64,000 nt of DNA from Syncephalis fuscata S228 (Eukaryota; Fungi; Zoopagomycota), in assembly GCA_025786725.1 (NCBI GenBank), contig JAHLTZ010000003.1, positions 806,001 to 870,000 on the forward strand, written 5' to 3'. The notes below the pieces were generated by a model. That model was not told where the DNA came from. It was given only the letters and a program-made list of their open reading frames with translations, and made no database searches. Positions within the stretch are counted from its first letter, which is position 1; each line of letters starts with the position of its first letter. Shown piece after piece: positions 22,544 to 37,100 of the stretch. A program made the position numbers and the translations under genes.

Positions 22544-25213
22544 ATGTCAGCTAATAATAAGACTACAGTAAATGAGGCGGCAACGAGCTCTAATGCCACT
22601 CAACTGCACGGACAATTACCGTCGACCGAGCTGTTTTCTATAGAATATCCAGGTTATGTACGTAACACGGATAAAGTATTAGAGACACTAGGCGGTATCG
22701 ATACAGTAACTCGAGTAAGTAAAAGTAGTCTTTGTAGGCATAATGACCTTACATTGGCCATGACTATTCGTGCTACTAAATAACCACCTTAACTACTTAG
22801 AATATGCGTAATATTATGGCTGACCAGTCAAATATTCGTCAACCGTTAAATATGCGACCCAATGACCTGTTCTCTATTCCTATCCAAGGTGACTATGTAT
22901 CAACACCGAAGCTATTATTACGCGTTCGACGAAAGAAAAAGCCACAACAACAAGAGGATACTGTAAACGGAGCAGGAGAAGCAGTAGCAATGGATACAGA
23001 TATGGATCGTTGTAATAATAAGACAACACCAGAATTTGAAGCAACTATAGTAGGACGTGTTAAACAAACATGTCGATTTAGAGGCAAGTTAATCCAGGCT
23101 AGAATTATTTAACATCTAATTATTATTAATAGCCATGTCTGATTTTCAGTATATGGCAGATAATAATCATCCAATTACTCATCTTTGTCAAGCTATGCGT
23201 AATGATGATGGTAAATATTATTAGTTAATTAACTAGATATATACTACGTATTAACGATACTGATTTTATTGTAATAGTAACAGCCATGCGTAATTTTAAT
23301 TTTAAATTTGCAAATGAAATGAATTCAACGCATATTGGTATACCACCACCTTTTTTCTCTCGTATTGAGGTAGGTGAACGTTTGATTCGATGGCTGCATT
23401 GTAAATACCGACTTATTATGGTATACGCATAATTATACCTATAGACACCTATAAACTATGGGTAAGTATATGAGTAGTATTGGTTATTGATACAAATATC
23501 TAATGACTATATACCTATATTAGATTTCGTCAACTTATCTATGTTAATGATAAGGAGAGTAGTACGCGTCCTGGAACAAATGTACGTACTAGTTTGACTA
23601 TAGTGTCTACATTATTATTGATTGATCCATTTATATTGAATAGGTAGCAGGTGTTGGTAAACGGTATACTCGTTGGCAGAACTCTTATTCAAAAACCCAT
23701 GTTATTCAGTACACTGCAGCCTATATCCTTTATACGGTATAATACAGCCGACTAACTAAACTATTATTCTTGACAAATATACACCTATTCCTGATAGGCC
23801 CGATGAGGAAGTAGTTAAATCAGCTGCTGATATTGATAAATCATTATTGGATAGAGCAGAGCAGGTAATAACTTGATATTATATATTTACAGTATTAATA
23901 TTAATAATAATAATAAGTAGTTATTTAAAGAACGGCCTATTTGGACTTCACGTAGTATTCATTGTGTTCTTAATGATGCGACACGAGAAGATATGCGAGT
24001 GTCAGTAGTTACACTATATTTTATATTTAATTATTAATAATATTAATAATAATAATAGTATATTGCGTTATAATGGCTATGTCATGATGAGAGGACCGTG
24101 GCGTGGTTGTTATATTCGCCTAGGTTATGATCCAAGAATAGATAAAGAAGCACGCAAGTAAGCAAAAGTTATTTACAATAATAGTAATAAATTAAACAAT
24201 ATATACATGTATAGATATCAATTATTAGATACACGTCCTAAAGCATCAGCAGCTGATCAAGCACAGAAAAACACTCATGCTATTCGATTAAACACTATAG
24301 GCCGTTTACCTGCCAATTCATTAACAGCAACTATGAATAGAAATACTAATGGACAGACACCAGGGTAATTGTTGATTGGTATACATATTATTTATTAACA
24401 AAAGTACTTATTAGACAACCACCGGTATTTGATGGTAAACATGATGTTTCAGGCATTATTAGTTGGCAATACTGTGATATTACCGATCAAGGTATTCGTA
24501 AAATATTAGATGCAGAGACTGCTGTGGCATCTAAATGTGATGTAAGTTATACGGACTATTATTACTAATGCTTTGATTAATAAGTATATTTATATAGGAA
24601 CGGAATGGCTGGTATAGAGCAGAGGCAATTTCTGGGATTCGAAGACTTTATCGACTTAAACGTCAAGCAATACGTCTAGGTAAAGATGCCAATGCTGAAG
24701 AAGAAGAATCAATTATTATAGAAGTATTAGCCGCTTTACAATATGGAGATGCTATTATGGAACTGAAGTATTCTCTCCACTCCATTCCATTCTGAAGTAG
24801 CGACATTAACAGCATCAGTAGCACTAGTAGATGATCAATTGTCAGCAACATCATCACTACCACCATTACAAAAAATGGATGCCAAGGTTAGTTAGTAAAC
24901 CACATATTTAATTTATAATATTTAATTATTATTATTATTGTTGTTGTTGTTATGTCATTAGATGGACGCATTAATGCAAAATCTTACACAGGCATTAGGT
25001 AGTGATAGCCAGTCAATGACTACTACGACGGATATGACACTGAACACTGATCAACAACAGTATTATAACAATATGTCAGGTTTATTCTCTGATGCCGATG
25101 AATTTGAAGGTATATTCGGTGATTCTTTAGATGAATTGGACGAAGAAGAAGAAGGTGAAGGTGAAGACGAAGAAGACGAAGAAGAAGACGAAGAAGAAGA
25201 AGAAGAAGAGTAG
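22544..25213 (+). CDS. TFC1: RNA polymerase III transcription factor TFIIIC tau95 subunit (Tfc1/Sfc1/GTF3C5)
   Basis: SIEYPGYV..TDKVLETLGG, CRFRAMSDFQY, LFKERPIW, GPWRGCYIRLGYDPR, acidic Glu/Asp C-terminal tail. Confidence 0.9.
23723..23784 (+). other. U12-type AT-AC intron (62 nt) in TFC1
   Basis: ATATCCTTT...TTCTTGAC-aaatatac-AC; splicing restores frame (QYTAAS-IPDRP); the nearby GT-AG alternative runs into an immediate stop. Confidence 0.85.
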
Positions 25214-25469
25214 ATGTTAAATGACGCGTTATTACAAATATTAGTATTCAATTAACCGTGACAAGTATTAACAAATTGACAGTTTATAATAAAACTACAT
25301 AAATAATTAATGTGGGTGTGAACATGCATTGATTGGTTAAATGAAAAAGATTTTGCGCTCTCTTTTTCAGCTATTCGTTTGGCGCATTCAACGAGGAGTT
25401 CCTTCTCTTTCCGTTGCTCAACGTACATACACGTTTAAATAGCGGCATCTATTCTTTGCAAGATCTACC

Positions 25470-25859
25470 ATGGCCCACGATCAAGTCTGGTTCTCTCGTC
25501 CCCGCCGTTACGGCAAGGGTTCTCGCCAATGGTAAGTAATGAACTAGTTGAATAGAGCCAAAACAGCTAGTAGTTGTGGTGGTGGTGGATCCAACAAACA
25601 TGCATACTTATCAATTACTTTGTATATAGCCGTGTGTGCACTCACCACCAAGGTCTTATCCGCAAGTACGGTTTGGATGTATGCCGTCAGTGCTTCCGTG
25701 AATACGCCAAGGACATCGGCTTCATCAAGGTAAGCAATATAGACACGCATATACGCGTAGATAATAGACGTGTCTACATATATACATACACACACATATA
25801 ATATATAATACACGATACTAATTACTCTCTACACCTCTATTACACTATAGTTCCGATAA
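25470..25859 (+). CDS. RPS29: 40S ribosomal protein S29 (uS14), 2 introns
   Basis: [56 protein letters not shown]. Confidence 0.97.
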
Positions 25860-26148
25860 GCTATTGGCATTATCTTTGGAGGACGCAAAGTCAAGCAACA
25901 GCATTGAGCTGGCTGCCCGTCTCGTTTAGGTCCTAATAAACGGACATTTTAAAATTATATTTTTACCACAAGATAGAATTATTGCATATATTGAGAATTT
26001 AAACTAATTGTCTTAATAAGAATAGTAATAATAGTATAATAATAGTATAATAATAATAATAGATGAAAACTTAATAGAACGGATACAAATACGACGTATA
26101 GATCGATATCCGGACATTCATATCAAACAATTTGGTAGTACTTTTAGC

Positions 26149-27158
26149 CTACATGCCACCATTTCGTGCACTCATACGCAATGATGCCATAGTATCGGTC
26201 ATCATGGTTGCTGTGTTATTATTATGGTTATTATTGAATAACCCACTTGTCTTGACATATTGTTGAATAACTATATATATATATATAATAAGTATTATTA
26301 ATTAGAACTATAGATAAGTAATGGACTGCTACTCATAGTCATCATTATATAGAACATTACACGCTTACCATTACAATCACAATCCTGATGGGCCAACTAT
26401 AATGAATGAATGAATGAATAATTAAATTTTATTAATATTTAAATGGATTACTACTTACCATTTGATTTTTTAATTGAATAGCTTCTTCCTTAAGTTGGCT
26501 TACCAATAACTGAAGTGCTTTGTTACGTTTGGTAACCTCTTCTGACTTGGTCTCTAATTCCTGCATCCATACCTTTCTCTTTTGACGACACTTGAAAGCT
26601 ATAAACAATAGATTAAGGATTTAATACTTAATTTTACATTTTAACTTACCAGCGACACGGTTACGTTCAAGGAACTTCTGTCGCTTACCGACATTGTCTC
26701 CATCGTCGTCATCGTCATCGTCTTCATCTTCATCATGAAAACTGCTATTATTGTTGCTCTTATTGCTTTTATTATTCACATCGCTATTGTTTGATTGCAT
26801 ATCGTAGCTACCATCGGTGGCATGGTTATTATTGGTCTTGTTTCGAACAGGTGACGGTGAGCGTGCGCGTTTCAATAATTTGTCCGATGGCGGCTGTACC
26901 TGAGCTGGATTAACAGCAGTAAATACTGGAGGCTGCCAGTTTGTCATTGTCTAAGAAGTATTGGTAGATAGATAGATAGATATACTATTAGTATAGTAAT
27001 GGCCAACTTTTCCTTGTCTTGTTCATTACCTGTTGCATAGATAGTGTTACCGTACTATCTGTAACACCAGTAACAGCAGCGACTACAGCAGCAGCAGCAG
27101 CCGCGGCCTCTTCATTGCTACGACGAAAACTCGCGTCAAAGGGATTAACCTCGGCCAT
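26149..27158 (-). CDS. ATF/CREB-family bZIP transcription factor (Atf1/ATF2-like), 4 introns
   Basis: N-terminal NPFDASF motif; basic region KRQKFLERNRVAAFKCRQKRK; leucine zipper ending LKNQMLAHQDCDC. Confidence 0.88.
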
Positions 27159-27533
27159 TATAGTACACACACAGTAGAATAGTTTACTGTGTTTATGAAT
27201 ATCGTATAAGACTGACGAATGCTATAATGATGATGACGAATAAAAACGTATAATATCGTCAGTAGATAAGACAGGTATGTATGTGTTAAAGAAGAAGATA
27301 AAGAGTCAAGGAGAATGAGTTTGTTCGTATGACTGATAAAGTAATATGGTTTATTAAGTGTGTGAATGTAAATATGCATCGGTATTAGAACACTCAGTGT
27401 AGAATCAATTACACACCCAGACACACAGAAAGTGAATAAGTGACCATCAATTGTAATGATGGACCTCGCCTTTCTTCCCGTCTACAGTTGACAGTACGTT
27501 TCGGTTTCACTTTGACGCTGACCATCTATCACC

Positions 27534-28271: not shown

Positions 28272-28380
28272 ATCAACTATTATTGTCCATCTGCTGTCCA
28301 GTGTTGATTTCATTGCCTCAATAAACAATTAACAAACAAAATAGGATGGTTTATTTATTGTAGATAATTTCTAAATAGGC

Positions 28381-31300
28381 TTAAAGCGTGGTAGTTGTGG
28401 TGATACTTGTAGTAGTTGTTGCTGCGGCGGCATTGGCTGCAGTTGCTAAAACGGCCAGTGTAGCATTACGGAATATAGATTCAGGGACGGCCGCCAGTTC
28501 TGCTTGAGCTTGTACAAGTACTTCGGCCGATAAAGGAACAGAACGTATATATAAATGGCTAGAATGGAATAAAACGTTAAGTAATATACAGTGCTTATAA
28601 GGCATTGCTTATTAGTCTTAAAGGATACATGAAATCTAATAATTGAATCGCATCTTGATGGAATACTTGATCCAAACCACTTAGTTCAAGTAATAAAGTT
28701 AATAGATGAAATAGTGCCTGTATAGTCAATAATCAATAATCAATATCCTATATTTTACTATGTTACTATGCTACTGTATTGCTTACAGTAGAGGCAAGGG
28801 CCGGCTGTTGTGTCGTATGATGAAGACCCACAGCAAGTAATTGCGGTACACGTAATGCACGTCCCTTGATCGCCAAATCCGGTCGACGTGTACTAATTGC
28901 CTCCATAATAGATGGCAGTATACAATCACCGGCAAATTGCATCAATTCATGTAGACAGGCCAATAGAGCCATAAGTGGTGTTGTCATATTGGTGGCTGAT
29001 GTCGTTGTGGTGTTCGATGAAGCCAATTCAAATAATCGTTTCTAATACAAAATAACAATAATATATGTGTGTTAAAAATAATGAAATAATAAATATTTGC
29101 TTACTTGGCGTTGAATATTATCATCTATTTGTGCATCCACTTCGAGTATTGCCGAGGCAATGGCCATCGTTAATGGAAATAGAAAGATTTCACGAGGTAG
29201 TGCCGCATACCATTGAGCAATAGCCCCTACTTGACTTATAGTTAATGGTGTTGTAGCAGTGGCTGTATACAAATAGTCCAAGGTAGATTGAATAATTGTT
29301 TCAGCTGGCCATAACATTGTATTTGTTTCAAATACAGTTGTATAAAGCAATTCTTTATGTACATCACACATTCACGGTATTGTTGTTTTATACGCCATTC
29401 TGGTTTACGATACTTGTTGGCTATTATTCGTTATTAGTTATTGGTCTATACTATTAATTGTAGTAATAGCTTACCATTGATTAGTCGATCTACTACTTGT
29501 TCTACTGAGAATTTAATCTCTGTCACATCTGGCCAAGACCGAACATAGTTAATAAAAATGGGTGAAAATGGATAACTTTCTAATGCTATATGATATACCA
29601 ATTAGATAAATAATAATACAATATAATTTATATATATATATATATCCACTTACGTAGTACTTTTAATAGTTTCATTAATAATGGTGGATTTTCCACAAAT
29701 GTTGCTGAATATGATTTTAGAAATGTGGTATTAGTTGCACTTAATAACGATAATCGTATTTCCACAACTGTCCATAAACATCAATTATTTGATGGCTGAT
29801 TCAATTCGCTTGGCATCAATAAATATGCCCAATACACCACGGAATACACTGGTAAAATCAAGAATATTACTGTAAAAGTAAACAGGTAGTGTTTCTTGGT
29901 CAGTTGATGGCGTGTCATTACCACATTTCTCAAAACAATTATATTCAGGAAATTCGTTAAGATATGTCACTAGTCGTTCATGATAATTTTCATCTTCCCA
30001 GTAGTTATGCTGGGTGAATAGAGTACACCATCGTTGTACTCGTTTCTGTAATTCATCTGTATGCAGTAAATAGCCTTCTAATAGATCCAATGTAGGTTCC
30101 ATATGATAATTACAGCGAGCAAATGCTATTATCAGCTGATTATGACTAATAACTTGAGCTTGCCAAGTAAGTCGATTTAATGCATTGCATGCCTACAATT
30201 ATAAACATCGATTAGTATTATTAAATGATTTAATATACAATATAGAGTACTTGCTGCTTCAACAGATACTAGCATTCCAACTGCTAGACTTGTATGTTCG
30301 GCCAATCGAATTGTGGCATGCATTAATTGATGTGGAGGTATTGATTGTAATACTGGACGTATTTCTATACCATTAATCAATATTAATAACCAGTAGTAGT
30401 AGTAGTGATTTATAGATATGTACCTGTTAATATTTGATCAATGTGTTCTGTATCATTAATACACTTCCACCATAGATATACAAGTACATCTAATTGATGT
30501 TCTGGTTGATTAAAGTCTTGTGGCGATAGATTAAGTATATGTTCTGGTTCCGCCTAAAATTATAAATTATAACTGGTGATTAGTAACTGATAATAGTATA
30601 TCCGTTAAATAGTTACATTTAATAATACTGGAGGTGGAATTAAAGATGATGTTTGTTGAACAAAACTTCTAATCGGTTCAGGGAAATGTTGAATGATTTC
30701 TGGTGCCCAACTAGGTGCTTCTGCAGATATACGCATAAGGATCTTTTCTAAACTAGCCTCACTTATAAGTGTTTTACGGTTGATATAACTATAAAAATAA
30801 TTAGAATAAGCTTTAACTATAACTGATGGTACTTACTTGAAACTCCACATGCGCGCTGTAGTCATCATAGTAATGCGGGCAAGTAAAGGCAATCCAGTAA
30901 AGGATATTTGATCAAGTATAGCAATGCAATCAGGTAGAAATTGGCCATTACTCTAGATAATCATTAATATTAGTGTATTATATATATGTATATATATATA
31001 TAATACTTACTAATAGATTGACGCATAAACTTTCGAGAATAATATAGACACGACGATTACGTATATTAGGAAGTGCTGCAATAATAGTCACAATCATGTT
31101 AACGGTTAATGATGATGATGTAATAATTAGTTAAGGATAAGTAGTACAGTTTGAATATTAAATAAATTGTTAAAAGGATATCTAAGGAATCGTAAAAGAC
31201 GACCACTTAATAGTTCAGCCATTGTACTAATCCAACGCCAAGTAGTTTCTGAGAATACAGATTGACCTTCTTTGGAATTCTCTTCTTTGGCCAATTTGGC

Positions 31301-34046
31301 CAATATACGTCTTAGTCGTTCAAATACCTCTGAAATCATCAATTCAGCTCTATAATTAATATTAATATTAATATATAGTTAGTTAGTTAGTTAATAAGTA
31401 ATACAATAATGTAACTTACGAAGAAGGTGACGAGTAAATAATATTGGCTACCACTTCAAGAACATAGGGTGATACTGAATTGGCCTCTACAGCATTAGGA
31501 AAGCGTGGACCCGTTTCATGATCAAGCATCATTTTATAGATTAATTGAAGTAATCTATTATATATATATATATATATTAGATAGTCAATGTTAATATATT
31601 AACCATACTTACCGGTGTCGACAATCAACGCTCACTAATCCAAGAAGTGAATAGTCAAGAATGCCACCCTTAAGAAAAGTGGCAGTAGAAAATGGCATCT
31701 TTTCTGTTTCCAGATTATCACATGGTACCAAATATACATAAAGTGTATCAGACACTAAATGTTGTCTTAATTGACTGACAATAGCAATACGCATAATTTC
31801 ATCAATCGATAGATGATGTAATAAAGATCGTTGAACAATATTGGCTATTGATATATTGATATATTAACATTATATATATATATAATGACGGTATTACCTT
31901 TATATGCATTAGCAAAGTGTGCCTATTGTTGATTAATACTACTTTATAAATAATTACTAAACTTTATAACTTACTTGAGTAGAAACATGCCTGTGCCAAT
32001 ACCATGGCTGATGCCAGTTTTGGATGACGAAATTTAATTAGATTTTTATCTTTTAATCGTTTTTGTTGATGACAAATCTATTTAATTAACATAACTTTAA
32101 CATGTATATTCACTATATTCGTTATATTCATTATATTACCGAACAAGGCATAGCTAAATCTACTATAGAAAATGATTGTTGTAGCATACTCTTTTCATCG
32201 CATAAATCAGTAATCTTTGCCAATAAACGTTCATCAGAGGCCAGATCTGCAGCAATAACTGCTTCCCCGACCTTTTCAATATCTAATATACACATTAGTA
32301 CTAATGTTGCTAATTAGTTTGTTTAAATAACTTACGGAATAGCTGCAATAGTAGCCATAATAAATAGTTAACATTACCATGTTGTCGTTCTCTTATTCTT
32401 TTTGCAATAGCTAGAAATTTGTCCGTCACTACTTCAAATGTTACAATTCTATATACTCCATATTAATACTATAGCTAATTGTATACCATTAATGCCTACT
32501 CTGAATCAACTAGTGTATATAAATCATCAGCTAGTTGAATAATACTGGAGAATGATGAAAAGTCGTTTGGTATGTAAACATCGGCATTATCTGCTCCAAC
32601 TGCGGCGAATTCTATTCAATTCAATGATTAGTTTAATACAAACTGTAAATATTATACGTACTTTCACTTGATACTTGAGCAATAGAATTGCTACATTCTA
32701 CAACTTTATCCTCTAAATTTCGAAAGAATGCGTCAATTAATTCTGGCACTGAACCTGCCTTGCCCGCTTTTGTCAAATGCAATAATTCACGTATAGATAT
32801 ATGAGGCAGTAATGGATTGCCATTAGTTGATTCATGTGGTGATATCTTTTGTACAAGTATTAAGTTAATATTTATTGTATCCCGTCTATTCCATAATAGC
32901 TTACTTTAAGGAGTGTATAGGCTGATGATGTCATAACTAATGGGTCTCCAGATAATAGCCAGGCATAGGATGAACATGAAGCATCCACTATTTACTCTAT
33001 TATTAGTATCTATCAACCATCTATACTATTAATCATTACCTGGTGGAAGGATCAATTCTGCTAGAGCAAGACGTCGTTTCCGTAAATGTTCTAATACACC
33101 ATCAAGTGCCCAGTGTTCTTGATCTCCAATAGAAATCTATTCATTATTATACCATTATTTAATTGGTTGATTTAAAACAATAGCTTTATAGAATATTACC
33201 TCAGAAACAATATCAACAAGCGAAAGTGGAGTGGCGCTTGCTTCTATGCCTACAAATACTAGTGGTTCTAGGACGGATACCGTTTTTTGAATGCCTACTA
33301 GTTGACTGGTGCGTAGATGAACAGGTAGTCGATTGACTTGTTGTACGAGCGTAGTAAGCACTCGATTAGCAAGTAGATTACGCATTGGTAAAGTAACAGG
33401 CAACCGTTGAAGCAATTCTTCCAGCAGTACTAATCCACGCTGCCATTGACTTGGTTGTGTAATATCAAGAATTGGCAACAGTGTACCCAATAAAGAGGCT
33501 GCTACCTGTGGTCGAGCTTGTACTGGATCCAATACACTGGAGCGTACAAACGTCGTTAATGCCGATAGTAATACGGCAAATTGATCTGAAGTCAGTGAGC
33601 GTTTTAACACTAAACTAATAGTCTGAGCAGCTGTTGGCTATAAGTATTCAGTTAGTATGTTATGCTATAGACAGTTAGTAGAGTTGGCTAGCAATAGTGC
33701 TTACATAGTTGCCTGTAAGATAGGCCGTCTCCAATGCTGTAACAATACGTTCTACATGACCTTCATCGGCAACACCAGAGAACACACCGAGACTATCCAG
33801 TGCCCACTCCTCTGCTAGATTGTGGCCATCCTGTTCGCCTGGAGTGAACAATCTACCAGGATTCAATGCTAGATTCGTTATACGTCATGGTACTTACCCG
33901 TCAAAGCAATAAGCGGGTGTACTTAAAGGACCTTTCTACTTGGCTATTAGGCAACACTATCGCCATCAGTGGCATAGACTACTTACTTCGAGATTTGTTT
34001 TGCAGGCAGATAGTTCTGCCGTAAGTATTGCTTCAAAATCAGCCAT
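28381..34046 (-). CDS. MED23: Mediator subunit MED23 homologue, ~25 introns; 5' exon structure uncertain
   Basis: Long helical protein with MED23-like segments WAPEIIQHFPEPIRSF, NYWEDENYHERLVTYLNEFPE, LPVYFYSNILDF..V, ACLHELM. Confidence 0.72.
28559..28628 (-). other. Candidate U12-type GT-AG intron (last intron of MED23)
   Basis: Minus strand GTATCCTTTAAG...TACTTAAC...TTCTAG; removal restores LLDFI-HLYIRS. Confidence 0.7.
31120..31181 (-). other. U12-type AT-AC intron (62 nt) in MED23
   Basis: Minus strand ATATCCTTTT...TCCTTAAC-taattatt-AC; consensus U12 donor and branch point; removal joins GRLLRFLR to SSSLTVNMIV in frame. Confidence 0.9.
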
Positions 34047-34183
34047 AGCGAATAAGATGTTGTTAGGTACAGAGTGACAGAGAGAGAAAGTGAGCGAGTG
34101 AGAGACAGAGAAAGTGTTTATTGTAAAAAATCGCGCTACGACTACGGCCTTCTTCTATTCACCAGTACACTGTTCCGTCCAAT
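34047..34183. promoter_or_regulatory. Compact bidirectional promoter between MED23 and INTS6
   Basis: Only ~137 bp between the predicted divergent ATGs; GA-rich tract at ~34070-34115. Confidence 0.6.
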
Positions 34184-37100
34184 ATGATTATTGCATTTCT
34201 AGTAGATACAAGTTCTTATACAGACCAGCGCTTTGCAGACGGTGTCCGTTTATTAAGTGCTGTACAAGACGCGGCTATTCGTGTGGTGGAGGTAAGATTC
34301 AATCTTTTTTAGTGATGCCGCTTGATGCTAAGTGTCTCGATAAACAAACACGCGTATATAGCAACTTCAATCGACTACTGCATCGGTGCGGTATATGTTG
34401 GTAACCTACGGGCGGGAAAGTACCGCGGTCAAGGTATGTTGTTCTAGACGAGTATCGGCTATAGCGTTATTCATGACAACGGCATCGACGGACTGTTTTG
34501 CTTAGGGGCTATAGTGTGACTTGTCTAGCCTGCCCGACGAAGTACTTTATGCTCTGCAGCGACTAGATAGTAGTGACAAATGGAATCCCGGTGAATCTCT
34601 ACGTACACTATTTAATACACTTAGTATAGATCGCACTATACGGGATGTTGATACATTTGGTCGAGTAAGTTTAATAGTATTAATTGACCTGTGTGTATAA
34701 TGTGTATTTACACTATAGGGACGAGTGCCTGGTGTCAATGAATCTGTCAAAATTATTTGGTGTGCTTATGGAGGACGTGTGGCACAAGGTGATCAAAAGG
34801 TAAAAATGACCATGTTTAATATTTGCTATTATACAAATGAATGTGTATTAGTTGGAAATTCCCGGTTCTACTTATCCGGGTACAGAACTTTATCGGGAGC
34901 CATTTCGATGGGATGAACGAATTCATTTAATGCTTATGCTGCCACAAGGAGAGACACCGGCAGTTGAACAACTAAGTATGATGAGCAATTTAACTGGAGG
35001 TGAGTAGATTTGCATTAAACGCAGTCAATACTGATCTATAGTATTAATTTATGATATTGGCGGTGGTAGGCGAGGTCACTTGGCCTACTTCAAGCGAGGC
35101 AGTATCTGAATTTATGCAATGGGTTATTTCACCTCAACTTGTTGTTCAAGGCATACCACGATCTGATAATGGTGTCTTGGTACATTTTGAAGATATTAAA
35201 CGTATGTATTTGGTACAAATAGTGACACATTAATATTAAATAATGCTGTTAGAGGATCCAAATCATACAGGCCCTAATGCTATATTAAGTGCATTTATAT
35301 CATTACATGTTCATCAATTGGCACCACTTTACTTTCCAATTCCTGAGGCTTATTGGCCTACATCGGATATGTCACAACTGGTCAGTAGATGATGGTTTTG
35401 TTATAGTTGGCATGGTAGACTATATTAATATATATATGTGTGTATTGAATATAGCCTGTTCGTGGGGCACATCCTATTCTAAGGATTATTTGGCATCCAG
35501 GAACGTGGACATCGACCCTATTACCACAGGAACATTATGATGTATTCTCTAAACCGTTACTTGCTCATATGCAAGCATATCCGCAAGATGGTCATTGGAA
35601 GGTATAGATGAAGCTGATTAGTAAATAGATTTAGTAGATCAATTAATGATTTATTAGGTATATGTTACAGACAGTGGAGCAACACCGGGTCTTGGCGATC
35701 CATTCGGTGTATTACAGCGTAGTTCACTTGATACAGAGTCGACTGAGGCAACTATTCGATTGACGCTTCTTCCATACAATTATCCTATGCTATCAACAAT
35801 TCTAGGTATGTGGATTACATTAAAATAGCTATTAAAATATTAATTAGCAGTTTAGAAAGTGAAAGCGGTGGTGCTTCTAGTATGATAGCCAATTACATGA
35901 TGCGTATACCTTGTTATTACAAAAAAGTAAGTAGAATTGTTATAAATGTAATTAATTAGTTTATTAATGGTATGATTTATAAGTATATTGCTAATTTATT
36001 AAAACAGCGTAATTTTCCAACTGATGGCTTAATTGGAAATACAAATGAGCTGCCTTTAAAACTATCTCAGCAACTATCACGTATGATGGAGGCGGTCAGT
36101 TTATTAGAATTAATGTATAATTTGATATTAATATGGCTATAATATAGGTAAAAACCGTAATTACTGCAAAGAAGCGACTGCCAGTAAGTATATTTGATGG
36201 TATTATTGCCAATGGCTCTAATTCAGCTATTAGATTAATCCATTTGAAGTCACGGTTAATGATTTAAATGCTCGATTGGCTGAATTACAAGTATCTCTAC
36301 TAAAAGGTGTACCTAATTTCTCAACAGTTCAACTAAAGTGGCCGGTATATGGTAATTTAAATAATATTGTTAATCCACTGTTAACGTTTAATTATAGGAT
36401 CTAATTTAAATCCATGTATTATGTATGGAGATGATCTAGCACCTATAGAGTCACCTGTACTCCCACCCGTACCTATGGGCATAGATATGGATATTTGCAT
36501 TGATACTACTGCGAAGGATCTAGCAATGAAAGTAAAAGAAATAGTTGAACCAGATCCTTCTATAATATTATCACCCAAGTTATCTACAAAGGATAACAAT
36601 GAAGCAGAATTAGATCATTCGACTATTCCGGCCAAACGATTAAATACAGATGTGACAGATCAACCACTAGATACAACTACAACTAAAATAGCTCGTACAC
36701 AGCCAAGTACTAATCAAGATGCATTACCGGTAGAAGCTACCAGTACTAAATTGTCAAAGACAAAAGAACATCAAAAAACTATTACTACTACTACTATTAA
36801 AAGTAATGTCAATGATATTAATAATACCAAAGCAATTAAGAAACAACCAAGTAAAGCTATTCGTGATTCTTCAACTGCTACTACTACAACAGCTAAAGCA
36901 TCATCCAAGCCTTCTACTGCTACTGCTACTACTGCTACTCCATCACGCCCATTAGAAGCACCCAATGATATGAAAACACGATTAGTAAAACATATTAAAC
37001 AAGGCCGTAAATGTAAGTGTTTAATTATAAAAAACATAAATAGTCTATACTTATTATTTGGTAGTATATAATGAAGAAGAAATTGTCGAGGAAATGAATC

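What the first reader, a model, noticed from the sequence alone, without database searches (positions are those of the whole stretch)
31120..31181. Consensus AT-AC minor-spliceosome intron in fungal MED23
Seen: minus-strand ATATCCTTTT donor, TCCTTAAC branch point 10 nt from a terminal AC, and removal of exactly these 62 nt restores the reading frame. Known: this is the U11/U12 consensus; the minor spliceosome is lost in Dikarya and kept only in some early-diverging fungi. Inference: this organism has a working minor spliceosome, and GT-AG-only predictors will mis-annotate the gene.
Basis: partly seen in the sequence, partly recalled or inferred. Interest (0 to 1): 0.8.

Follow-up and report, generated by a model that had tools for sequence, protein, structure and literature searches.

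The report
U12-type AT-AC intron in Syncephalis MED23
A 62-base intron in the Mediator subunit 23 gene of the fungus Syncephalis fuscata carries all the signals of the rare "minor" splicing system and is removed exactly there in RNA; this is expected for an early-diverging fungus, and it corrects a wrong public gene model.

Summary
On the minus strand, 31181..31120 is a 62-nt intron that starts ATATCCTTTT, carries TCCTTAAC, and ends in AC 10 nt after that motif. No match turned up in 100 shuffles. Read unspliced, the frame hits a stop; removing the 62 nt restores it.

- **RNA evidence:** A spliced transcript contig from a public run skips exactly 62 nt here. A 2-nt ambiguity in the junction allows the AT-AC cut.
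- **Organism and gene:** The genome matches Syncephalis fuscata (Zoopagales), and the gene is MED23.
- **Splicing machinery:** The genome has U11 and U6atac above Rfam cut-offs. U12 and U4atac candidates score below cut-off but have the right functional boxes and complementarity. PDCD7/59K and SNRNP25-type protein domains are also present.
- **Conservation:** The same AT-AC intron sits in the same codon and phase in S. plumigaleata, Radiomyces and Phycomyces. It is absent from Basidiobolus, Umbelopsis, Mortierella, Ambispora and Coemansia.
- **Annotation:** Public models of three of the four intron-bearing species mis-annotate the site. S. fuscata KAI9598837.1 uses a 125-nt GT-AG intron and loses 21 residues.

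Minor splicing in early-diverging fungi is already documented, so this is a new member of a known kind. First readers of this scan noted other AT-AC introns and a U11 gene elsewhere in this genome.

The parts
31120..31181 (-). U12-type AT-AC intron, 62 nt, phase 2
   Evidence: Sequence; pattern unique against shuffles; 62-nt skip in a transcript contig
31172..31181 (-). 5' splice site ATATCCTTTT (U11/U6atac recognition)
   Evidence: Seven-pair duplexes with this genome's U11 5' end and with the U6atac AAGGAGA box
31130..31137 (-). Branch-point box TCCTTAAC; predicted branch A at 31131
   Evidence: Pairs with the GUAAGGA box of the U12 candidate, with a bulged A
31120..31121 (-). 3' terminal AC
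31182..31349 (-). Upstream MED23 exon (ends ...RLLRFL + AG)
   Evidence: Transcript joints; aligns to MED23 of nine other fungi up to the splice site
31011..31119 (-). Downstream MED23 exon (A + SSSLTVNMIVTIIAALPNIRNRR...)
   Evidence: Aligns to the S. plumigaleata, Umbelopsis and metatranscriptome orthologues
31076..31200 (-). 125-nt GT-AG intron used by the public model KAI9598837.1; the transcript contig does not support it
   Evidence: Exact mapping of P0064 onto the window against the 62-nt joint
28381..34046 (-). MED23 gene (approximate CDS span), with about 22 introns

Best explanation
This is a genuine U12-type (minor-spliceosome) AT-AC intron in the MED23 gene of Syncephalis fuscata.

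Inferred mechanism, by analogy with the characterised animal and plant system: the U11/U12 di-snRNP recognises the ATATCCTTTT donor through the U11 5' end and the TCCTTAAC branch box through the U12 GUAAGGA box. U6atac, delivered paired to U4atac, then replaces U11 at the donor. The 62 nt are excised between 31182 and 31119.

Shown here: the motifs, the frame restoration, the 62-nt removal in RNA, the presence of the snRNA and protein genes, and the conservation of the intron.

Inferred: that the minor rather than the major spliceosome does the cutting, and that the intron was inherited from the common ancestor of Zoopagomycota and Mucoromycota and then lost repeatedly.
For: - **Motifs and frame:**. 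Chance expectation is 0 in 100 shuffles.
- **RNA:** transcript contig with a 62-nt skip at 31117->31180 and a 2-nt ambiguity.
- **Machinery in the same genome:**
  - U11, 47.5 bits, above cut-off.
  - U6atac, 37.8 bits, above cut-off.
  - U12 candidate, 34.6 bits, E = 4e-4, with a conserved branch-binding box.
  - U4atac candidate, found by complementarity to this U6atac. It has a K-turn and an Sm site, and the predicted duplex shows stem II, the 5' stem-loop and stem I.
  - PDCD7/59K domain, 29-33 bits, above cut-off.
  - SNRNP25-type Ubiquitin_4 domain, 38 bits.
- **Other candidates genome-wide:** 14 strict donor+branch matches against 3 for the reversed-pattern control.
- **Conservation:** an AT-AC intron with U12 motifs at the same site and phase in S. 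plumigaleata, Radiomyces spectabilis and Phycomyces blakesleeanus. The Radiomyces public model already uses it.
- **Literature:** minor snRNAs and introns are documented in zygomycete and chytrid fungi and in Zoopagomycota (PMC2396436, PMC10639083).
Against: - Run X1 is recorded only as 'RNA?' and is held as contigs. Rare isoforms, intron retention and splicing efficiency therefore cannot be seen.
- The junction can be placed three ways within 2 nt.
- The U12 and U4atac candidates score below Rfam gathering thresholds.
- The U11-48K zinc finger was not found.
- The 65K, 35K and ZRSR2 proteins were not tested, because no specific family models or seed sequences were available.
- No experiment shows dependence on the minor spliceosome.
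Confidence: 0.93

Rival explanations
1. The real intron is the 125-nt GT-AG intron of the public model (31200..31076), spliced by the major spliceosome. On this reading the 62-nt form is a minor or artefactual isoform.
For: The public model KAI9598837.1 (P0064) uses it and stays in frame. The acceptor TTATTGCAG looks good. Contigs drop rare variants, so a second isoform cannot be excluded.
Against: The only transcript contig across the site skips 62 nt, not 125. The donor GTCTTT is weak. The 21 residues this model deletes, including RLLRFL, are conserved in all nine orthologues examined. Three other species have the AT-AC intron at this exact site.
Confidence: 0.03
2. The AT-AC intron is real but is removed by the major (U2-type) spliceosome, as happens for a small class of U2-type AT-AC introns.
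For: Terminal dinucleotides alone do not define the spliceosome used (general knowledge; PMC3584512 reviews this).
Against: The donor matches the U12 consensus over 10 nt, and the branch box TCCTTAAC sits 10 nt from the 3' end with no polypyrimidine tract. These are the features that define U12 dependence. Complementary U11, U12 and U6atac sequences exist in the genome. The motifs are conserved across two phyla while the rest of the intron is not.
Confidence: 0.03
3. The 62-nt skip is an artefact of transcript assembly or of reverse-transcriptase template switching.
For: The evidence is a single contig from a single run, and two letters are shared at the junction. The same contig differs from the assembly by several 1-nt insertions.
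Against: A 2-nt overlap is too short for typical template switching. The skip coincides exactly with full U12 consensus signals and restores the frame. The other joints of the same contig fall at canonical intron ends: 13 of the 15 listed besides this one are GT-AG on the minus strand and one is GC-AG. Orthologues have the same intron.
Confidence: 0.01

Closest known systems
U12-type (minor, AT-AC class) spliceosomal introns of animals, plants and early-diverging fungi
   Same: ATATCCTT donor, TCCTTAAC branch box 10-12 nt from the 3' end, AC terminus, no polypyrimidine tract, non-zero phase, and position conserved between distant species (PMC3584512, PMC10639083).
   Different: It is very short (62 nt), the same size as this genome's U2-type introns. 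Its host lineage, Zoopagales, is not named in the papers I could search.
Minor introns reported in Rhizopus, Phycomyces, Rhizophagus irregularis and Basidiobolus meristosporus (PMC2396436, PMC10639083)
   Same: The same splicing system in non-Dikarya fungi. Phycomyces and Radiomyces carry this very intron in MED23.
   Different: The MED23 intron itself is not mentioned in those papers' main text. Basidiobolus, the minor-intron-rich Zoopagomycota species, lacks an intron at this site.
Mouse Med23, listed as a minor-intron-containing gene (PMC12956336)
   Same: The orthologous gene also depends on the minor spliceosome in mouse: retention of its minor intron rose after U11 ablation.
   Different: The mouse intron is reported as phase 1, whereas this one is phase 2. 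Whether the sites coincide could not be tested. The fungal site maps to about residue 617 of human MED23, chain 7emf_W.

Membership tests
U12-type (minor-spliceosome) intron | 5' splice site consensus [A/G]TATCCTT directly at the exon border | tested here: met
   ATATCCTTTT at 31181-31172
U12-type (minor-spliceosome) intron | Branch-point consensus TCCTTAAC about 10-15 nt upstream of the 3' splice site, with no polypyrimidine tract | tested here: met
   TCCTTAAC at 31137-31130, with 10 nt (TAATTATTAC) to the intron end
U12-type (minor-spliceosome) intron | Excised in vivo at these borders | tested here: met
   Transcript contig joint skipping 62 nt, with a 2-nt placement ambiguity
U12-type (minor-spliceosome) intron | Splicing depends on U11/U12/U4atac/U6atac and not on U1/U2 | not testable with these tools
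   Only complementarity could be shown: U11 and U6atac each form 7 pairs with the donor, and U12 pairs with the branch box around a bulged A
U12-type (minor-spliceosome) intron | Intron class conserved at the orthologous position | tested here: met
   AT-AC introns with both motifs in the same codon and phase in S. plumigaleata, Radiomyces and Phycomyces
Genome with a minor spliceosome | U11 and U6atac snRNA genes | tested here: met
   RF00548 47.5 bits and RF00619 37.8 bits, both above gathering score
Genome with a minor spliceosome | U12 snRNA gene | tested here: inconclusive
   RF00007 34.6 bits, below gathering score 53. The match is full length, E = 4e-4 genome-wide, with a conserved UAAUGAGUAAGGA box and a 3' stem-loop
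Genome with a minor spliceosome | U4atac snRNA gene | tested here: inconclusive
   RF00618 found nothing genome-wide. A pattern built from complementarity to this U6atac found G000:C57:447094-447253(-). That locus scores 22.4 bits over the full model, has a K-turn and a CAAUUUUUGG Sm site, and is predicted to form stem II and stem I with U6atac
Genome with a minor spliceosome | Minor-spliceosome-specific proteins | tested here: met
   PDCD7/59K C-terminal domain above cut-off. Ubiquitin_4 (PF18036) domain above cut-off; that this family is SNRNP25-type is from my memory. zf-U11-48K was not found. 65K, 35K and ZRSR2 were not tested
Mediator subunit 23 (MED23) | Sequence membership of Pfam Med23 and orthology to named MED23 | tested here: met
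   Exon 29788-30192 hits PF11573 at 5e-11. The exons match S. fuscata KAI9598837.1 exactly and align to named fungal MED23. A profile of the fungal orthologues hits human MED23 at 1e-84. The whole public model P0064 gave no Pfam hit at E <= 0.001; a damaged model is a possible reason, not tested

The most novel reading that the evidence does not exclude
The MED23 minor intron is older than fungi. On this reading it is the same intron as the minor intron of animal Med23 and was inherited from the opisthokont ancestor or earlier. It was then kept in Zoopagales and Mucorales and lost in at least five other fungal lineages. That would make MED23 a useful marker gene for tracing the stepwise loss of minor introns in fungi.
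Probability: 0.1. Interest if true: 0.45.

Novelty: new member of a known kind. Interest (0 to 1): 0.3.

Why it matters
- It gives transcript-backed evidence that a Zoopagales mycoparasite keeps working minor splicing, with candidate loci for all four minor snRNAs.
- It corrects the MED23 gene model: 21 conserved residues are missing from the public protein.
- It shows that GT-AG-biased annotation mishandled the same intron in three of the four species examined, so minor-intron counts taken from public fungal annotations are probably underestimates.
- The presence/absence pattern across nine fungi is a clean example of an old minor intron lost repeatedly.
- None of this changes current understanding of minor splicing.

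Tried and rejected
- **U4atac, Rfam route:** RF00618 found nothing genome-wide. The only hit at E <= 10, L016, has no complementarity to U6atac and was rejected.
- **U4atac, first pattern:** An exact complementarity pattern hit a GC-rich locus, L005, that is not U4atac.
- **48K protein:** zf-U11-48K (PF05253) was not found.
- **Animal comparison:**
  - A single-sequence search of the PDB gave nothing; a profile was needed.
  - P0017, from a springtail, turned out to be an AAA_12/PIN protein and not MED23, so no animal MED23 locus was obtained.
  - P0007, from Basidiobolus ranarum, had no contig on record.
- **Supplement look-ups:** The searches for Syncephalis and for mouse Med23 intron coordinates were blank.
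- **Paper search:** No listed hit (the 12 best of 3,182 papers) paired Syncephalis with U12.
- **Joined protein:** Exons were searched by reference, and the two flanking exons were joined only inside a local script to check the reading frame.

Full report
**The observation**

The minus strand at 31181..31120 is 62 nt. It begins ATATCCTTTT and carries TCCTTAAC at 31137-31130. Ten further bases follow that motif, and the last two are AC. The upstream frame (...AELLSGRLLRFL) runs into a TAA stop if the stretch is read through. Removing exactly 62 nt joins AG|A into an Arg codon (phase 2) and continues as SSSLTVNMIVTIIAALPNIRNRR. The composite pattern of donor, 25-55 nt, branch box, 6-12 nt and AC occurs once in the 64-kb window and in none of 100 dinucleotide-preserving shuffles.

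**RNA evidence**

One public run (X1, 2017) holds this stretch. Its record only guesses that it is RNA. Laid on 28300-34200, its contigs show 22 joints, 15 of them listed. Thirteen of the listed joints are CT..AC on the plus strand, which is GT..AG for this minus-strand gene, so the run holds spliced RNA.

The joint at 31117->31180 skips 62 nt. Two letters fit either side, so removal of 31120-31181 (AT..AC on the minus strand) is one of three equivalent placements, and it is the only one with known splice signals. Because these are contigs, minor isoforms and intron retention cannot be assessed.

**Gene and organism**

- Exon 29788-30192 hits Pfam Med23 at 5e-11.
- A search of protein representatives with that exon found Syncephalis pseudoplumigaleata as the closest representative, plus full-length fungal MED23 proteins.
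- A word search seeded with the Radiomyces protein returned 47 MED23 proteins (E <= 1e-5), nearly all carrying a fungal species name.
- One of these, KAI9598837.1 of Syncephalis fuscata (P0064), maps onto the window's exons without a mismatch over 1257 residues. Its contig length of 978,862 is compatible with the window's position, C223:806001-870000. The genome is therefore S. fuscata, a zoopagalean mycoparasite.
- A profile of 16 fungal orthologues hits human MED23 structures at 1e-84.

**The public model is wrong at this site**

P0064 reads ...AELLSG-P-LPNIRNRR. It uses a weak donor (C|GTCTTT at 31200) and the acceptor TTGCAG at 31076. This is a 125-nt GT-AG intron, and it removes 21 residues relative to the transcript.

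The deleted residues include RLLRFL, which is conserved in all nine orthologues inspected.

**Splicing machinery in the same genome (29.4 Mb, 371 contigs)**

| Component | Locus | Result |
|---|---|---|
| U11 | C112:215199-215380 | 47.5 bits, above cut-off; 5' AAAAAGGG and an Sm site |
| U6atac | C315:4451-4610 | 37.8 bits, above cut-off; AAAGGAGAGA box |
| U12 | C157:67826-67997 | 34.6 bits, below the 53-bit cut-off; full-length match, E = 4e-4, conserved UAAUGAGUAAGGA branch-binding box |
| U4atac | C57:447094-447253 (-) | missed by Rfam; 22.4 bits when scanned locally |
| PDCD7 (U11/U12-59K) C-terminal domain | C46 | above the Pfam cut-off |
| Ubiquitin_4, PF18036 | C24 | 38 bits |
| U11-48K zinc finger | - | not found |

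- **U4atac:** I found the candidate with a pattern written from complementarity to this genome's U6atac. The pattern gave two hits genome-wide and none for the reversed control. The C57 locus aligns to RF00618 over the whole model. It has the K-turn and a CAAUUUUUGG Sm site. Co-folded with U6atac, it forms stem II, the 5' stem-loop and stem I.
- **PF18036:** That this domain is SNRNP25-type is from my memory.
- **Untested proteins:** 65K, 35K and ZRSR2 could not be tested specifically.
- **Other candidate introns:** A strict donor-plus-branch pattern matches 14 places in the genome, against 3 for the reversed control. The genome therefore holds at least about ten such introns, not hundreds.

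**Pairing with the snRNAs**

The U11 5' end and the U6atac box each form seven pairs with the donor. The U12 box pairs with the branch site around a bulged A. This is what the known mechanism predicts. It is not proof that the minor spliceosome makes the cut.

**Conservation**

I fetched MED23 loci from nine other sources and located the homologous site by aligning the upstream exon.

| Source | State at the RFL[K/R] codon |
|---|---|
| S. plumigaleata | AT-AC intron, phase 2 (ATATCCTTTG...GCCTTAAC...GTAC) |
| Radiomyces spectabilis | AT-AC intron, phase 2 (ATATCCTTTT...TCCTTAAC...TTAC) |
| Phycomyces blakesleeanus | AT-AC intron, phase 2 (ATATCCTTTT...TTCTTAAC...GTAC) |
| Basidiobolus meristosporus | continuous coding sequence |
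| Umbelopsis sp. | continuous coding sequence |
| Mortierella alpina | continuous coding sequence |
| Ambispora leptoticha | continuous coding sequence |
| Coemansia sp. | continuous coding sequence |
| Metatranscriptome contig (mRNA) | continuous coding sequence |

The intron interiors are unrelated between species; only the signals are kept. The simplest reading is one old minor intron that predates the Zoopagomycota/Mucoromycota split and was lost several times. This is an inference.

Of the four public models for intron-bearing species, only the Radiomyces model uses the AT-AC borders. The Phycomyces and S. plumigaleata models read into the intron and then use other sites.

**What is already known**

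- Minor snRNAs and introns in zygomycete and chytrid fungi were reported in 2006-2008 (PMC2396436).
- A survey of more than 3000 genomes found them in Glomeromycota and Zoopagomycota and found no convincing case in Ascomycota or Basidiomycota (PMC10639083).
- None of the papers I could search names Syncephalis or fungal MED23 in this context.
- Mouse Med23 is listed as a minor-intron gene with a phase-1 intron (PMC12956336).
- The fungal site maps to about residue 617 of human MED23. I could not obtain an animal gene structure, so the identity of the two introns is open, and the phase difference argues against it.

**Verdict**

This is a real, transcript-supported U12-type intron and the genome has a credible minor spliceosome. 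It is a new member of a well-known kind, and its practical value is in correcting gene models.

Noticed in passing
window 29364, 29752, 29787 and about 31977 (MED23 exons): The transcript contig has one extra base (C, G, G, G on the plus strand) at four places relative to the assembly. With N placed at 29752 and 29787, exon 30192..29657 reads as one open frame through a conserved MED23 stretch. The public model instead invents a 70-nt, a 26-nt and an over-long 80-nt 'intron' around these places. Single-base deletions in the assembly are the likely cause. A strain difference was not excluded, because no DNA reads were laid.
   Followed up: partly
window 30193-30254 (minus strand): The transcript joint 30189->30252 (skip 62, three letters ambiguous) fits a GC-AG intron with donor GCAAGT. 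The GT four bases downstream would give a 58-nt intron and is not used.
   Followed up: yes
window 23723-23784 (plus strand): A second 62-nt AT-AC candidate, with ATATCCTTTA donor and TTCTTGAC branch box 8 nt before AC. Frame and transcript support were not checked.
   Followed up: no
L006 2349-2702 and L011 6570-6877; window about 25400-27500: MED23 is followed by a TCTP gene in S. pseudoplumigaleata and S. plumigaleata. If so, the neighbourhood is conserved within Syncephalis.
   Followed up: no
P0064 (public S. fuscata MED23 model): The whole public protein gives no Pfam hit at E <= 0.001, although a single intact exon scores 5e-11 against Med23. A possible reason is that the damaged model hides the family; this was not tested.
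   Followed up: no
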